Below are positions 50,243 to 63,853 of a stretch of 64,000 nt of DNA, one piece after another. Within the stretch, counting starts at the first letter, position 1. Each line of letters begins with the position of its first letter. The position numbers and the translations under genes were made by a program. The stretch lies in the IMG/VR virus record IMGVR_UViG_3300045996_002337, positions 62,001-126,000 of that record. One strand, 5' to 3'. Under the pieces are notes generated by a model that saw only the letters and a program-made list of their open reading frames with translations, was not told where the DNA came from and ran no database searches.

Positions 50243-50283
50243 GTTGATAGGTAGATTATATCAACCTGACCCAGGTTGTACAC
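50243..50283 (-). promoter_or_regulatory. Early sigma70-like promoter with hairpin
   Basis: GTGTACA-N16-TATAAT; inverted repeat GTTGATA/TATCAAC around the -10. Confidence 0.75.
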
Positions 50284-50285
50284 TA

Positions 50286-50456
50286 CTAGAAGCACATTGT
50301 GTAGCGAAGCTTTTTACCACGAATACCGATTCGGTCTTGACAGCCATTCTTTTCACTGATGACCCAATAGAGCGAAGGGCGCCCGCTCTTTGGTTCAGCT
50401 TTCATGGTCGAACAACCAGTGAGAAACAAGATCGAAAGGCAAATAAGCAGCTTCAT
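50286..50456 (-). CDS. Small lipoprotein (56 aa)
   Basis: MKLLICLSILFLTGC lipobox; AGGAG SD; GTAAATA at 50480-50486. Confidence 0.65.
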   Translation of the reverse strand: MKLLICLSILFLTGCSTMKAEPKSGRPSLYWVISEKNGCQDRIGIRGKKLRYTMCF

Positions 50457-50501
50457 ACAACATCTCCTTAGCACTCTGATATTTACCAGTCGATCAACCT
50501 G

Positions 50502-50970: not shown

Positions 50971-51015
50971 GGTTGGTATGAAGCTATTATACTCAACCTA
51001 TGTTAGCTTGTACAC
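50971..51015 (-). promoter_or_regulatory. Early sigma70-like promoter with hairpin
   Basis: GTGTACA-N17-TATAAT; GGTTGGTAT/ATAC(T)CAACC. Confidence 0.75.
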
Positions 51016-52418: not shown

Positions 52419-52434
52419 GCTGCTTCCTTAAGGT

Positions 52435-52477
52435 GGTCGATGGGTTGATTATACACCCATCGACCTGCGTTGTACAC
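52435..52477 (-). promoter_or_regulatory. Early sigma70-like promoter with perfect 11-bp hairpin
   Basis: GTGTACA-N17-TATAAT; GGTCGATGGGT/ACCCATCGACC flanks the -10. Confidence 0.8.
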
Positions 52478-52483
52478 TACTTC

Positions 52484-53962
52484 TTAGGTGATGTTAGCAA
52501 GCGCAATACGCTTCCACAGCTTCGAGCCGGAGTTCGCAACTTGGATCACGTTCAGCAGGGAGCGGCTCGAGATTTCTGCCGCGATTTCACGGTTGTCGTA
52601 GAGGAACTTGTAAGCTTCTTCCTTGATTTCCATCGAGACACCGGGCGCGAACTTCTCGCTCGGCAGAATTTGACGCATGCGTTCGAAGCGCTCTTCAATC
52701 GTCATCTCGAGGTCTGCACGCAGCGAGCGCGTGATCAGCGGTTGGGGGAAATCTTCGGACTTCACGTTCGAGATGAAGATGACGCGGCCTTCAAACAGGA
52801 AGCTGCGCGGCAGGTCGTCGTTGGCCGAGCCTTCCACGTTCCACGTCACCCAACGCTCGGTGTCGGTGTCGAGGGCGGCCTTCAGCAGGTTTGCCGAGAC
52901 CTCATTCTTCCATGCGGCGTCGCAGTCATCAAACACGACGAGCTTCTTCTTGTTCTCGAACAGCGTACGGAAGAGGCCCTTGGCGCTCGAGTAACCTTTG
53001 ACATAGTGATAGTCACCTGCCAGGTCGGGGGCTTGCTTGACGTTCTCTACGTCCATGGTGTGATATCGGTCGGCAGGGATGCCGAAAACCGACGTCATGA
53101 TCTTGCACCATTCCTTGCCGTGGCCCTGCTTCACCTTAAGGCTCTTGGGGAAGAGCATAAATTGCACGTGGTGGGCAACCTCGTGCGGCACGATGATGTC
53201 GTAGTACTCGCTGGGGTTCGCCATCGCCAGCTTGATGTTGAACTGATACTTGTTGGTACCGGGGAAGAACCGACCGCCACAGGTGCGATCCTCGAGTGAT
53301 TTGGAGGTGTGCAGGCCGGTGAAGTCCACATCACCAAAGACCAGCTCGAGCTCGTCGAGTTCCTCGTCTTCTTCGTCCTCGTCCTCGTCTCGATCGGCCT
53401 TGCTGGTCTTCGGGAGACCATGTTCCTTGTAGTACGCGATCGCTTGGGCACGGCATTCCTTCATGCGACGAAGGATGTTGTCGGCTACGACTTGTTCTTC
53501 CGGTGTGAGGGTGTAGGCAAGCTTCATGGCTTCCTCGGTGGAGAGGAGACCGTGTTCGCGAATCTTTTCCTTCGTGTGGAAGGTCTTACCGAGCGAACCC
53601 TCACCGGTGATGATCAGCGATCGAATGCCGATGTTGCGGATCACGATATCGACGCACTCGTCGAGCAGCTCGTAACGTTCCTCAACGCTGAGGAGGTTGT
53701 TCGGCTTAACGCGGGGAGCTTGCGGGGTATAGGCGCGCGAGACGCCTTCCGACGTGGGGCTCGGTGCAAAATTGACTGGGCCGAGGTTGGAGAAACCTGT
53801 CACGTTCAGCTTGAGGGCCTTCGAGCACTTGCCCTCGAGAATGCGGGAGATGACATACTGCTTCGACGATTCGCCACCAACTGAACGCACAAGAACTTGG
53901 CCGTCAAATTCGGCAGACCAAGTGTTGGTGTTTTCGTCGTGGCAAAGGGTTGCGAGATTCAT
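52484..53962 (-). CDS. AAA+ ATPase with nested SprT-like zinc metalloprotease domain
   Basis: Walker A GEGSLGKT; HEVAH...GHGKEW; Walker B VVFDDCD; start moved to 53962. Confidence 0.75.
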   Translation of the reverse strand: MNLATLCHDENTNTWSAEFDGQVLVRSVGGESSKQYVISRILEGKCSKALKLNVTGFSNLGPVNFAPSPTSEGVSRAYTPQAPRVKPNNLLSVEERYELLDECVDIVIRNIGIRSLIITGEGSLGKTFHTKEKIREHGLLSTEEAMKLAYTLTPEEQVVADNILRRMKECRAQAIAYYKEHGLPKTSKADRDEDEDEEDEELDELELVFGDVDFTGLHTSKSLEDRTCGGRFFPGTNKYQFNIKLAMANPSEYYDIIVPHEVAHHVQFMLFPKSLKVKQGHGKEWCKIMTSVFGIPADRYHTMDVENVKQAPDLAGDYHYVKGYSSAKGLFRTLFENKKKLVVFDDCDAAWKNEVSANLLKAALDTDTERWVTWNVEGSANDDLPRSFLFEGRVIFISNVKSEDFPQPLITRSLRADLEMTIEERFERMRQILPSEKFAPGVSMEIKEEAYKFLYDNREIAAEISSRSLLNVIQVANSGSKLWKRIALANIT

Positions 53963-53971
53963 TCGGTGATT

Positions 53972-54024
53972 TCCTGCAGTGGAGTTGATAGGATAGATTA
54001 TATCCACTCCATGCAGGATGTACA
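53972..54024 (-). promoter_or_regulatory. Early sigma70-like promoter within a long hairpin
   Basis: TGTACA-N16-TATAAT; stems TCCTGCA/TGCAGGA, TGGAGT/ACTCCA, GGATA/TATCC, loop GATTA. Confidence 0.8.
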
Positions 54025-54416: not shown

Positions 54417-54904
54417 CAAAATGCCTTGGTGAGGGAGAGCTGCAACGCATTCACACCAGGATTCGGGCGCTTGAACCCAGCGTTGCTGAAATGTGAGGCG
54501 CGAACCCCAACAACGATGGAGGGGCCGTATCGCCACCCCACACCGAGATGGTCAGCGAACTGCCACCGAGTGGTGATGTCCTGCTCAGCGAACGTCGTGT
54601 CCGTAAAGTAGGAGACGCCGATGCCTGCCTCAACGAACCACCGCGGATTCAAGTTGGCCCGCAGCATAGGGACTGCTGACAGCTGTACAGATCCGCCATT
54701 TGGGCCGTGCCAAAAAGACACGCCGACTTCGGGATGCATCATGATCGAGTATTTCCCGAATTCGCTAACGAACTTCGGTTCGAAGAGGCGATTAACCGTT
54801 ACGCGATACGTCCGCTTCTCGCCACCCACTTGGGCTGAATACAGCGTGTCTGCTTGAGCGGAGGTGGCGAGAAGCGCCACCAGGAGGATTGCCGCGCTCT
54901 TCAT
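54416..54904 (-). CDS. pagL: Lipid A 3-O-deacylase PagL
   Basis: Signal peptide, beta-barrel pattern, 'FVEAGIG', 'QFADH', 'HFSNAG..RPNPGVN', terminal Phe. Confidence 0.85.
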   Translation of the reverse strand: MKSAAILLVALLATSAQADTLYSAQVGGEKRTYRVTVNRLFEPKFVSEFGKYSIMMHPEVGVSFWHGPNGGSVQLSAVPMLRANLNPRWFVEAGIGVSYFTDTTFAEQDITTRWQFADHLGVGWRYGPSIVVGVRASHFSNAGFKRPNPGVNALQLSLTKAF

Positions 54905-55146: not shown

Positions 55147-55186
55147 ATGATGGTTAGATTATAACCACATTTTGAAAGATGTACAC
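55147..55186 (-). promoter_or_regulatory. Early sigma70-like promoter with hairpin
   Basis: GTGTACA-N16-TATAAT; ATG(A)TGGTTA-GATTA-TAACCACAT. Confidence 0.8.
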
Positions 55187-55416: not shown

Positions 55417-55874
55417 TACCGCACCTTGAGGCGAAGCCAGCTCTCAATTGCTTGACGAACGATTGGCTTGATATCTTCCTTGCTGATAACCACGTCTTCA
55501 GAGATTGAAATTTCCCCATCAAACGTCGGCTCGAATGCACCAGTGGCCACCAAGGCCTCCATCATGTCAATGGTGGCGTGATCAAGCTCGTCATCGTATG
55601 GAACACCTTGGTCAATCGTGTCATGAATCTCCTTGAGAATTTCATCTTGACGATCAACTTTCATAGAGAGCCGCTGAACTTCAGCTTCGAGCTCATCCAC
55701 AGTTTCCATGTACGCAACGAACATGCCGTCAACCTGCGTAATAAGTTCATTGAGTTCCTCACCGGGAGGAACGTGCCCAGTTTCTGAAATTGAGCCTCCA
55801 GAAACTGCATCAAGAATGTCTCGAAGGCGGGCCAACCCGATTTCTTCGTCGCTAACTCTACTTACGATTTCCAT
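55416..55874 (-). CDS. Acidic coiled-coil hypothetical protein
   Basis: AGGAG SD. Confidence 0.55.
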   Translation of the reverse strand: MEIVSRVSDEEIGLARLRDILDAVSGGSISETGHVPPGEELNELITQVDGMFVAYMETVDELEAEVQRLSMKVDRQDEILKEIHDTIDQGVPYDDELDHATIDMMEALVATGAFEPTFDGEISISEDVVISKEDIKPIVRQAIESWLRLKVR

Positions 55875-56319
55875 TATTGTCTCCTTGATAGAACTGTTGG
55901 AAGCACTGCGTCCAATCTTTACGGATGCATTCCTGCGCCTGGGTTATTTCCATCCGCCCTGAACAAACTTCTTTGCGAAGTCGCACCTCTAGGCGGGTCT
56001 TCGAGAAAACATTCCAATCTGCCCCGTATTCATGGGGCCAAAGGTTCCTTGGATCGTTTGAGCCGCCAATGGACAGCGGAATCAAGTGATCAATCTTGCA
56101 ACCTTTATTACACCGCTCTTTATCAACCTTGTGAGCCCTGTAGACTTTATTCTTGATTGATCTGGAGACATTTCGCGCCTTTGCGGGATAGTCTTTGGCG
56201 CACACTAGAACTGTGTCGGTTGACGCAACAAGCCCTGGCGTTAATTCTGGGGATGGGAGATATGGATATGACTGCGCCGTTGTCGCGCAAAAGAGAAGAA
56301 GCCAGATGCCGCTGCGCAT
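55858..56319 (-). CDS. HNH nuclease with signal peptide (probably exported)
   Basis: 'MRSGIWLLLFCATTAQS', 'IDHLIPLSIGGSND..NLWP', several Cys. Confidence 0.7.
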   Translation of the reverse strand: MRSGIWLLLFCATTAQSYPYLPSPELTPGLVASTDTVLVCAKDYPAKARNVSRSIKNKVYRAHKVDKERCNKGCKIDHLIPLSIGGSNDPRNLWPHEYGADWNVFSKTRLEVRLRKEVCSGRMEITQAQECIRKDWTQCFQQFYQGDNNGNRK

Positions 56320-56589: not shown

Positions 56590-56691
56590 GTTTTGTACTA
56601 CTCCGGGGTTTATGAAAGTAACATCAATATCATTACCGATGTTACTTCATTATAGAACTACAGGTTAAAATAGTACAATTGTAAACGAAGG

Positions 56692-63817: not shown

Positions 63818-63853
63818 GAATGAATTATATCCATAACATCACAGGTTGTACAC
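63807..63853 (-). promoter_or_regulatory. Early sigma70-like promoter with hairpin
   Basis: GTGTACA-N17-TATAAT; GTGATGTT/AACATCAC. Confidence 0.75.

What the first reader, a model, noticed from the sequence alone, without database searches (positions are those of the whole stretch)
52484..53962. SprT-like metalloprotease nested inside an AAA+ ATPase
Seen: Walker A (GEGSLGKT, ~53590) and Walker B (VVFDDCD, ~52930) are separated by ~200 aa containing an acidic tract (DRDEDEDEEDEELDELE) and HEVAH...GHGKEW; the gene has its own early promoter. Known: SprT/SPRTN/Wss1 proteases remove DNA-protein crosslinks with the separate AAA+ p97/Cdc48; FtsH and Lon fuse their domains in tandem, not nested. Inference: a single-chain ATP-driven protease that could strip host or defence proteins from phage DNA, with the acidic tract as a possible DNA mimic or autoinhibitor.
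Basis: partly seen in the sequence, partly recalled or inferred. Interest (0 to 1): 0.7.

Follow-up and report, generated by a model that had tools for sequence, protein, structure and literature searches.

The report
SprT protease nested inside phage ATPase
A roughly 350-kb jumbo phage encodes one protein in which a SprT-type zinc protease domain is spliced into a surface loop of a phage AAA+ ATPase (the T4 NrdC.10 family), a real, conserved and apparently undescribed arrangement whose target is still unknown.

Summary
Window 52484-53962 (-) is one 492-aa ORF. Its ends form a complete AAA+ module. Residues 137-315 in the middle are a SprT-like zincin domain, with an acidic tract inside it.

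- **Scaffold:** it belongs to the phage NrdC.10 / phrog_1250 family.
- **Insertion site:** the insert sits in the connector between the Walker A helix and strand beta2, which is hypervariable in this family.
- **Active sites:** both are conserved. G125, K126, D345, D346, N399, R412 and R467 are invariant in 120 relatives. H260, E261, H264 and H281 are invariant in all 47 insert-bearers.
- **Structure:** the AlphaFold model (pLDDT 90.9) aligns with AAA+ structures across the insert. The insert alone matches bacterial SprT residues about 2-122 and human SPRTN, but lacks SprT's zinc ribbon.
- **Origin:** a scaffold-only tree needs only one insertion event. Carriers are jumbo-phage contigs and Ralstonia phage RsoM2USA.

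The scaffold's named sequence relatives are clamp loaders and replication initiators, not unfoldases. It has a DD Walker B and no aromatic-hydrophobic-Gly pore loop. Acidic tracts also occur in this loop in relatives that lack SprT.

My best reading is an ATP-gated, DNA-associated protease. The substrate is untested.

The parts
53997..54024 (-). sigma-70-like promoter, TGTACA-N16-TATAAT, 35 nt upstream of the ATG
   Evidence: 10 of 12 consensus matches; one of 6 copies of the same motif in the window (expected 0.02)
53972..53975 (-). AGGA ribosome-binding site, 9 nt before the ATG
   Evidence: read directly from the sequence
52484..53962 (-). CDS, 492 aa plus stop: SprT domain nested in an NrdC.10-like AAA+ ATPase
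53783..53962 (-). N-terminal small beta/alpha domain (aa 1-60), shared with insert-less NrdC.10-like proteins; function unknown
   Evidence: pLDDT 88-96; 65% pairwise identity
53705..53782 (-). poorly conserved, low-confidence linker (aa 61-86)
   Evidence: pLDDT below 50 at aa 64-76; 33% identity
53555..53704 (-). first piece of the AAA+ core (aa 87-136): alpha0, beta1, P-loop, alpha1
53582..53605 (-). Walker A, GEGSLGKT (aa 120-127); G125 and K126 invariant in 120 sequences
53018..53554 (-). insert (aa 137-315): SprT N-terminal helices, basic/acidic loop and zincin core; no zinc ribbon
53345..53395 (-). acidic low-complexity tract (aa 190-206), variable in length (7-20 D/E among carriers)
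   Evidence: the same kind of tract occurs in insert-less relatives
53171..53185 (-). HEVAH zinc-binding and catalytic motif (H260, E261, H264), invariant in 47 carriers
53108..53125 (-). GHGKEW with the third zinc ligand H281 (invariant), matching HGKEW of Salmonella SprT
52487..53017 (-). second piece of the AAA+ module (aa 316-492): beta2 to beta5 and the helical lid
52976..52999 (-). beta2-alpha2 loop, KGYSSAKG (aa 322-329); K322, G323, K328 and G329 are conserved; not an aromatic-hydrophobic-Gly pore loop
52919..52939 (-). Walker B, VVFDDCD (aa 342-348); D345 and D346 invariant
52766..52780 (-). beta4, IFISN, ending in the sensor-1 residue N399 (invariant)
52727..52729 (-). R412 (invariant) in the motif SRS just before beta5; aligned to the SRC arginine-finger motif of RFC5
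52562..52564 (-). R467 (invariant) in a lid helix, at the sensor-2 position

Best explanation
This is a bifunctional jumbo-phage enzyme. The N-terminal ~120 residues of a proteobacterial-type SprT zinc protease (helix plus zincin core, without its C-terminal zinc ribbon) were inserted once into the variable alpha1-beta2 connector of a phage NrdC.10-family AAA+ ATPase. Both active sites have been kept since. SHOWN: the nesting, the contiguous AAA+ fold, conservation of the ATPase motifs and of the HExxH...H zinc site, a single origin, single-copy status in the genome, and a promoter-like site upstream. INFERRED: the ATPase works as a nucleotide-dependent switch or targeting module of the clamp-loader/initiator kind, not as a threading unfoldase. 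It stands in for the lost zinc ribbon, which is SPRTN's DNA-binding sub-domain. In this way it would bring or license the exposed protease to proteins sitting on DNA, bound tightly or covalently, probably early in infection. The acidic tract would be a flexible, scaffold-associated loop rather than part of the protease mechanism.
For: Architecture. AAA+ fold across the insert: about 200 residues spanning model positions 93-492 align with NorQ, CbbQ, dynein, ClpA, LonC, RuvB and RFC at Z 10.4-13.0; Foldseek finds HslU, RFC and NorQ at E 1e-4 to 1e-3. Model quality: pLDDT 90.9, pTM 0.77. Insert: equals bacterial SprT residues ~2-122 of 165 (TM 0.55-0.64, E 2e-6); best solved match is the human SPRTN SprT domain (probability 0.92); 33-34% identical to enterobacterial SprT; the alignment shows the CxC...CxxC ribbon is missing. 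Invariant residues. All 47 carriers match PF10263. Single origin: carriers form one side of a branch in a tree built without the insert columns (SH-aLRT 87; the 46-member core 100), needing 1 change. One copy of each domain in the 349,660-bp genome, with no insert-less paralogue. Switch-type scaffold: sub-threshold NCBIfam hits among 74 insert-less members are RFC small subunit (24 and 14 members, best E 1e-5 to 3e-6), Hda (17), Orc1/Cdc6 (12), RFC large subunit (8), DnaC-like, Pol III gamma/tau, DnaA and IstB, with none to Clp/HslU/Lon/FtsH in the 25 most-matched families listed. A profile search against PDB sequences puts RFC5 at E 0.006, with IFISN...SRS aligned to LICNY...SRC, and ORC4 at 0.009. 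DD Walker B is typical of DnaA/DnaC-type switches (general knowledge). DNA link of the protease family: SPRTN is DNA-activated through a zinc-binding sub-domain next to its protease sub-domain and uses a third histidine as ligand (PMC7213743; PMC7534798 abstract).
Against: No direct evidence here for DNA binding, oligomerisation, ATP hydrolysis or proteolysis. The biochemical role of bacterial SprT itself did not turn up in my searches, so the DNA link is extrapolated from eukaryotic SPRTN, Wss1 and GCNA. The best structural neighbours (NorQ, CbbQ, dynein) and two short strands at aa 371-373 and 387-389, just before beta4, look like a pre-sensor-1 hairpin. That points to clades which include unfoldases, so the AAA+ clade is unresolved. 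All clamp-loader/initiator hits are below curated cut-offs. Gene neighbours (PagL, HNH, ClpP, PhoH, RNA ligase) say nothing specific. In a T4-like phage that has both a stand-alone sprT and an NrdC.10-like gene, the two lie 30 kb apart, so there is no 'Rosetta stone' adjacency.
Confidence: 0.5

Rival explanations
1. One reading: a self-contained Lon/FtsH/HslUV-like machine. A hexameric ring unfolds substrates through a central pore and feeds them to the built-in SprT sites, as a single-chain equivalent of p97 plus SPRTN.
For: AAA+ fold with lid, arginine finger and sensors. Foldseek ranks HslU, Cdc48 and LonC high, and HslU, LonB and LonC also carry insertions between Walker A and B. A possible pre-sensor-1 hairpin. 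p97 does assist SPRTN (PMC9127365).
Against: No aromatic-hydrophobic-Gly pore loop (KGYSSAKG). Walker B is DD, not DE. No sequence-level hit to any Clp/HslU/Lon/FtsH model, while RFC, Hda and Orc recur. By textbook AAA+ topology the alpha1-beta2 connector lies at the strand-start edge of the sheet, away from the pore loops and the ATP site. The protease should therefore be displayed on the outside rather than enclosed below a pore (inference; coordinates could not be inspected).
Confidence: 0.15
2. Passenger model: the SprT domain landed in a permissive loop and acts as an ordinary, ATP-independent protease. The ATPase keeps its unknown NrdC.10 function. The two are merely tethered, so they are co-expressed and co-localised.
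For: The connector is hypervariable (0 to about 75 aa, median 24) and tolerates other inserts. The zincin core evolves faster (59% pairwise identity) than the ATPase (72-81%). Stand-alone SprT genes exist in other phages, unlinked to NrdC.10 (PMC7824862).
Against: The fusion has persisted from about 30% to 77% identity across a jumbo-phage lineage with no split or loss seen among 47 carriers, and no insert-less paralogue is retained. The SprT zinc ribbon was lost, which suggests the scaffold now supplies what the ribbon did.
Confidence: 0.2
3. Self-processing or non-catalytic model: the SprT domain cuts only its own chain, for example in the disordered acidic loop or the aa 61-86 linker, to activate or release the ATPase; or it is a structural substrate-binding module.
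For: SPRTN is known to autocleave (PMC7826251 title and abstract). Two disordered, fast-evolving segments are present.
Against: A purely structural role is unlikely while H260, E261, H264 and H281 are invariant in 47 sequences down to about 25-30% identity. Nothing here indicates a conserved cleavage site, because the loops are not conserved.
Confidence: 0.07

Closest known systems
T4-type NrdC.10 / phrog_1250 phage AAA+ ATPases (function unknown)
   Same: The whole scaffold: N-terminal small domain, Walker A, KGYSxAKG loop, DDxD Walker B, IFISN sensor 1, SRS arginine, lid with R467. phrog_1250 E 1e-38. 35-52% identity over the C-terminal half. Atlas and BFVD neighbours are nearly all viral.
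   Different: Those proteins are about 280-350 aa with a short alpha1-beta2 connector. This one carries a 179-aa SprT insert there. Among the best 150 of 3001 representative hits, only two full-length clusters have it.
Gammaproteobacterial SprT (E. coli/Salmonella SprT, PRK04860)
   Same: N-terminal helix plus zincin core; VPHExAH and HGKEW motifs; TM 0.55-0.64; 33-34% identity over 84 residues.
   Different: SprT is a free-standing 165-aa protein with a C-terminal CxC...CxxC zinc ribbon. The Atlas SprT cluster carries PF17283 in 98% of members. Here the ribbon is absent, an acidic loop is added after the first helix, and the domain is embedded in an ATPase.
SPRTN/Wss1 working with p97/Cdc48 (eukaryotic DNA-protein crosslink repair)
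   Same: An SprT-fold protease combined with an AAA+ ATPase. The protease sub-domain is the best solved structural match (6mdw/6mdx).
   Different: In eukaryotes these are two separate proteins. p97 is a classical-clade unfoldase recruited through ubiquitin/SUMO adaptors. Here it is one chain, with a different and probably switch-type AAA+, no ZBD, and no SHP, PIP or UBZ motifs.
AAA+ proteins with a domain inserted between Walker A and B (HslU I-domain, archaeal LonB membrane anchor, LonC insertion, RuvBL1/2 domain II)
   Same: The AAA+ core is interrupted between Walker A and B. HslU aligns over about 450 columns for this reason.
   Different: None of those inserts is a protease. In Lon and FtsH the protease follows the ATPase in tandem, and HslV is a separate chain. 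As far as I recall, those inserts come after beta2/alpha2, whereas here the site is before beta2 (general knowledge, not tested).
ArdC (plasmid R388 anti-restriction protein)
   Same: A mobile-element protein that joins a DNA-binding module to an SPRTN-like zincin domain (PMC7213743). ArdC-like peptidases are also noted in jumbo and huge phages.
   Different: ArdC uses an ssDNA-binding N-domain in tandem, has a Glu as third ligand and has no ATPase. Its protease activity was not needed for its known phenotype.
GCNA/ACRC (acidic disordered region plus SprT domain)
   Same: An acidic low-complexity region in the same polypeptide as an SprT protease.
   Different: In GCNA the acidic region is long and N-terminal. 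Here it is a 20-50-aa loop that also occurs in relatives without any protease.

Membership tests
SprT-like zincin (Pfam PF10263) | Profile match above the curated cut-off | tested here: met
   40.8 bits against 25.6, E 2e-10; all 47 carriers match
SprT-like zincin (Pfam PF10263) | HExxH plus a third His ligand in an HGxxW/F motif | tested here: met
   H260, E261, H264 and H281 invariant in 47 sequences; aligned with HELAH and HGKEW of Salmonella SprT
SprT-like zincin (Pfam PF10263) | Fold of the SprT/SPRTN protease sub-domain | tested here: met
   Insert model pLDDT 86; SprT TM 0.55-0.64; SPRTN 6mdw probability 0.92, though E only 0.15
Bacterial SprT proper (PRK04860 equivalog) | C-terminal zinc ribbon (PF17283) and full-length match | tested here: not met
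   57.8 bits against a 175 cut-off, profile positions 51-124 of 170 only; ribbon cysteines absent
SprT/SPRTN family | Zinc- and DNA-dependent proteolysis | not testable with these tools
   needs biochemistry
AAA+ ATPase | Walker A GxxxxGK[ST] | tested here: met
   GEGSLGKT; G125 and K126 invariant
AAA+ ATPase | Walker B hhhhD[DE] | tested here: met
   VVFDD; D345 and D346 invariant, the DD variant
AAA+ ATPase | Alpha/beta base plus helical lid, with sensor 1, arginine finger and sensor 2 | tested here: met
   About 200 aligned residues at Z 10-13 to many AAA+ structures, spanning base and lid; N399, R412 and R467 invariant
AAA+ ATPase | Ring or spiral oligomer with a trans-acting arginine | tested here: inconclusive
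   The only attempt, a dimer prediction, returned no verdict
NrdC.10 / phrog_1250 | Collinear profile match over the whole scaffold | tested here: met
   E 1e-38 in two stretches around the insert; alignments; single clade in the tree
AAA+ proteases (Lon, FtsH, HslUV, ClpXP type) | Aromatic-hydrophobic-Gly pore-1 loop after beta2 | tested here: not met
   The loop reads KGYSSAKG; position 324 is K in T2 NrdC.10
AAA+ proteases (Lon, FtsH, HslUV, ClpXP type) | Protease domain or partner downstream of the ATPase forming a chamber; sequence kinship to those ATPases | tested here: not met
   The protease is nested before beta2; no Clp/HslU/Lon/FtsH model appears among the listed hits
Clamp-loader / initiator clades (RFC, DnaX, Hda/DnaA, Orc/Cdc6) | Profile match over cut-off | tested here: inconclusive
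   Recurrent but sub-threshold hits only; structural Z for RFC is 10.4-10.9, against 13.0 for NorQ
Clamp-loader clade (RFC, DnaX) | C-terminal collar domain after the lid | tested here: not met
   The chain ends with the three-helix lid at aa 492
Known anti-phage defence proteins (PADLOC) | Any profile match | tested here: not met
   No hit for this protein or for T2 NrdC.10

The most novel reading that the evidence does not exclude
A new class of single-chain, ATP-gated, DNA-associated protease. A clamp-loader-like phage AAA+ recognises a DNA structure or a DNA-bound host protein and licenses its built-in SprT domain to cut that protein. This would give jumbo phages a one-polypeptide counterpart of the eukaryotic SPRTN/p97 pathway, used for host takeover, counter-defence or clearing crosslinked proteins from a 350-kb genome. 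It would also give the widespread NrdC.10 family of T4-like phages its first functional handle.
Probability: 0.25. Interest if true: 0.8.

Novelty: new variant of a known kind. Interest (0 to 1): 0.55.

Why it matters
AAA+ ATPases and proteases are classically joined in tandem or as separate rings. A catalytic protease domain spliced into the ATPase core is a different way to couple nucleotide state to proteolysis.

It also links two orphan families. Bacterial-type SprT has an unclear role. The NrdC.10 phage ATPases are present in T4-like phages and in thousands of metagenomic sequences, with no known function.

Ralstonia phage RsoM2USA is cultivable and carries an orthologue, so the idea can be tested at the bench.

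If the protease acts on DNA-bound proteins, this would be the first prokaryotic-virus analogue of DNA-protein-crosslink proteolysis, or a new counter-defence principle.

Tried and rejected
- **Dimer prediction:** two full-length copies returned no verdict. It is not evidence either way. A hexamer did not fit the size limit.
- **Direct sequence search against solved structures:** the whole protein and the insert profile gave only chance-level hits.
- **Word-indexed search with the insert alone:** nothing at E 1e-3 or better, so the donor of the insert could not be traced beyond 'proteobacterial SprT-like'.
- **PADLOC:** no defence-system match.
- **Atlas feature search of the N-terminal domain:** nothing usable. 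That domain remains unassigned.
- **Megablast against phage records:** no near relative.
- **Sequencing runs:** only wastewater metagenomes holding 5-8% of the words, meaning relatives. I laid no reads, so there are no transcription data.
- **Adjacency of stand-alone sprT and NrdC.10-like genes:** in Cronobacter phage LPCS28 they are 30 kb apart.
- **Recent foreign insert, judged by composition:** GC is uniform (0.55-0.60) across insert and flanks, consistent with an old event.
- **Frameshifted, chimeric or two-gene artefact:** rejected. The same continuous ORF occurs in 47 independent contigs and one isolate.
- **The long antisense ORFs over the gene as genes:** rejected as shadows of the sense frame.
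- **Model coordinates:** I could not inspect them. The position of the SprT active site relative to the ring, and the zinc-site geometry, are therefore not measured.
Full report
**1. Is it there?**

Yes. Window 52484-53962 (minus strand) is a single open frame of 492 codons. It starts at an ATG preceded by AGGA. The gene call on the source contig gives the same 492-aa product.

- Walker A GEGSLGKT, aa 120-127
- acidic tract, aa 190-206
- HEVAH, aa 260-264
- GHGKEW, aa 280-285
- Walker B VVFDDCD, aa 342-348

These are not chance matches:
- Pfam SprT-like scores above its curated cut-off (E 2e-10, aa 223-301).
- The NCBIfam model of E. coli-type SprT matches at E 1e-15.
- phrog_1250, a 327-position phage family of unknown function, matches at E 1e-38 in two pieces that lie either side of the SprT segment.

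**2. The nesting**

A translated search of phage genomes gave 1268 records matching only the C-terminal third, and one full-length match. The partial matches are the NrdC.10 genes of T4-like phages. The full-length match is gp429 of the 344-kb Ralstonia jumbo phage RsoM2USA, 34% identical and annotated as hypothetical.

Alignments with T2 NrdC.10 and with insert-less metagenomic relatives show collinearity over the whole scaffold. The one exception is a gap of about 170-180 columns. It begins just after the helix that follows the P-loop and ends just before the strand DYHYVKGY.

In the AlphaFold model (120-sequence alignment, pLDDT 90.9, pTM 0.77) this gap is the connector between alpha1 (aa 126-136) and beta2 (aa 318-322).

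An exhaustive structural comparison aligned about 200 residues spanning model positions 93-492, on both sides of the insert, with many AAA+ proteins. These included NorQ (Z 13.0), dynein, CbbQ, ClpA, LonC, RuvB and RFC, all within Z 10.4-13.0. Foldseek found HslU, Cdc48, RFC, NorQ and LonC. The AAA+ fold is therefore contiguous in space although split in sequence.

**3. The insert**

I folded aa 137-315 alone (pLDDT 86).
- It superposes on gammaproteobacterial SprT residues about 2-122 of 165 (TM 0.55-0.64, E 2e-6).
- Among solved structures it is closest to the SprT domain of human SPRTN (probability 0.92, 24-26% identity).
- It is 33-34% identical to enterobacterial SprT over 84 residues.

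Alignment with Salmonella SprT shows three things:
- The first long helix and the zincin core are present, including VPHExAH and HGKEW.
- The acidic tract is an extra loop between that helix and the core.
- SprT's C-terminal CxC...CxxC zinc ribbon is gone. The chain goes straight back into beta2 of the ATPase.

H260, E261, H264 and H281 are invariant in all 47 insert-bearing sequences, down to about 25-30% identity. SPRTN uses exactly such a third histidine as a zinc ligand (PMC7213743). I could not inspect the zinc-site geometry because model coordinates are not exposed.

**4. Distribution and history**

The window lies in an IMG/VR virus record of 349,660 bp, rated 97% complete. That genome has one SprT domain and one NrdC.10-like gene, and they are the same gene.

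The word-indexed search found 46 full-length insert-bearing proteins including the window's own, the others at 58-77% identity. They come from metagenomic contigs of up to 375 kb. About 70 insert-less proteins of 270-350 aa followed.

The exhaustive representative search found 3001 relatives at E 1e-3 or better and 1302 at 1e-10 or better. Among the best 150, only two full-length clusters carry SprT: the window's own clade and an RsoM2USA-like one.

I built a tree from scaffold columns only. It puts all 47 carriers on one side of a branch (SH-aLRT 87; the 46-member core at 100). One gain therefore suffices.

A 375-kb relative keeps the same gene order around the gene: RNA ligase, ClpP, PhoH, a gene of about 530 aa, small ORFs, then the SprT-ATPase. 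RsoM2USA shares several other genes with the window at 27-45% identity.

GC content does not differ between insert and flanks. The insertion is old and has been inherited within a jumbo-phage lineage.

**5. What kind of ATPase?**

All motifs needed for an active AAA+ are invariant across 120 sequences: G125/K126, D345/D346, sensor-1 N399, R412 and lid R467.

Sequence evidence points to clamp loaders and replication initiators:
- Among 74 insert-less members, the recurrent sub-threshold NCBIfam hits are RFC small subunits (24 and 14 members, best E 1e-5 to 3e-6), Hda (17), Orc1/Cdc6 (12) and RFC large subunit (8), plus DnaC-like, Pol III gamma/tau, DnaA and IstB.
- No Clp, HslU, Lon or FtsH model appears in that list.
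- A family profile searched against PDB sequences puts RFC5 (E 0.006) and ORC4 (0.009) first among AAA+ proteins. IFISN...SRS aligns to LICNY...SRC, the arginine-finger motif.
- Walker B is DD, as in DnaA/DnaC-type switches (general knowledge).
- The beta2-alpha2 loop is KGYSSAKG rather than aromatic-hydrophobic-Gly.

Structural evidence points elsewhere:
- The structural ranking slightly favours MoxR and dynein modules.
- The model shows two short strands (aa 371-373 and 387-389) where a pre-sensor-1 hairpin would be.

I therefore call the clade unresolved. The sequence evidence leans towards a DNA-associated switch ATPase and away from a processive unfoldase.

**6. The acidic tract**

The tract is conserved in composition but not in sequence or length. 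Carriers have 7-20 D/E residues in segments of 22-52 aa, and pairwise identity there is 28%. For comparison, the zincin core is at 59% and the ATPase at 72-81%. The tract is modelled as a loop of middling confidence.

The same connector in insert-less relatives is hypervariable, with a median of 24 aa and a maximum of about 75. It carries acidic tracts in at least 15 of 73 of them. Some of those are helix-basic-acidic arrangements much like the one here.

Three such proteins sit in the sister group of the insert clade, at support 79.

The acidic tract is therefore a trait of the ATPase family's loop. It is either older than the SprT insertion or has been selected there repeatedly. It is not a device specific to the protease. 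What it does is open: a flexible tether, a mimic of DNA for a basic surface, or bait for basic proteins.

**7. Mechanism**

*Shown.* One polypeptide carries two conserved catalytic centres. The SprT module has lost its usual partner domain, the zinc ribbon, and is embedded next to the P-loop helix.

*Inferred.*
- The ATPase replaces the ribbon's role. In SPRTN, that zinc-binding sub-domain provides DNA binding and gating.
- Nucleotide- and probably DNA-dependent assembly would then target or license the protease.
- By AAA+ topology the connector lies at the edge of the sheet opposite the pore loops. The protease is therefore more likely displayed on the outside than enclosed.
- A target on DNA is suggested only by family analogy: SPRTN, Wss1, GCNA and ArdC.

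I put about 0.5 on this switch/targeting reading as a whole. Within it, I put about 0.25-0.35 on the specific 'proteins on DNA' target. The rivals are a Lon-like unfoldase-protease (0.15), an uncoupled passenger domain (0.2), and self-processing or a non-catalytic role (0.07).

**8. Promoter**

TGTACA-N16-TATAAT sits 35 nt upstream of the ATG. The motif recurs six times on the minus strand of the window (0.02 expected). Each copy lies in front of a minus-strand ORF, and the copies share downstream bases.

The gene thus has its own sigma-70-like promoter of a phage-wide class, in a cluster of small genes that each have one. This is compatible with early expression, which was not tested. The sequencing-run search found only distant holders.

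**9. Novelty**

- The jumbo-phage survey by Iyer et al. mentions SprT-like peptidases in some phages but not this architecture (PMC7824862).
- The RsoM2USA paper does not discuss ORF429, SprT or AAA.
- Other searches gave nothing.
- AlphaFold DB clusters, BFVD and the Atlas contain no other model with this architecture except the RsoM2USA protein.
- Databases label members 'SprT-like domain-containing protein' or 'hypothetical'.

It is a new variant built from two known kinds.

Noticed in passing
window 54419-54904 (-): A phage-encoded lipid A 3-O-deacylase (PagL, Pfam E 2e-27) with a typical signal peptide, two genes upstream of the target. No match to it was found in the syntenic 375-kb relative L007. 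This is an unusual accessory gene that would modify the host outer membrane.
   Followed up: partly
window 50255-50282, 50986-51014, 52448-52476, 53997-54024, 55158-55185, 63824-63852 (all -); a near-match ends at 56678: A recurrent promoter-like motif, gTGTACA-N15/16-TATAAT, followed by ctaYC.ATCA. Six exact copies against 0.02 expected, each upstream of a minus-strand ORF. Probably this phage's host-sigma-70-dependent promoter class.
   Followed up: partly
alpha1-beta2 connector of insert-less relatives (P0127, P0064, P0140, P0243, P0263, P0186 and others): Acidic low-complexity tracts, sometimes preceded by an Ala/Lys-rich helix and a KKKK patch, recur in the same loop of NrdC.10-like ATPases that have no SprT. 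The loop is a hotspot for insertions in the family.
   Followed up: partly
window 52433-53299 (+) and 53309-53884 (+); L001 3962-5275 (-): Long antisense ORFs (288 and 191 aa) overlap the gene. In the RsoM2USA record such an antisense ORF is annotated as a protein (RsoM2USA_428) opposite gp429. This is most likely a spurious call.
   Followed up: no
window 55861-56319 (-): A 153-aa ORF with a signal-peptide-like N-terminus and a sub-threshold HNH endonuclease match (HNH_5, 21.7 bits against 27.5). A secreted or periplasmic HNH-like protein would be odd.
   Followed up: no
window ~59.9-62.4 kb and ~43-49 kb (from the gene table): The neighbourhood also encodes a T4 Rnl1-type RNA ligase, a ClpP protease, PhoH, an S11 D-Ala-D-Ala carboxypeptidase-like protein, NUDIX, a nucleoside deoxyribosyltransferase and a cREC_REC domain protein. 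It looks like an accessory or host-takeover region, and the phage has a second, unrelated protease.
   Followed up: no
window 50286-50474 (-): A small ORF (62 aa) with a lipoprotein-like signal (hydrophobic stretch followed by LTGC).
   Followed up: no
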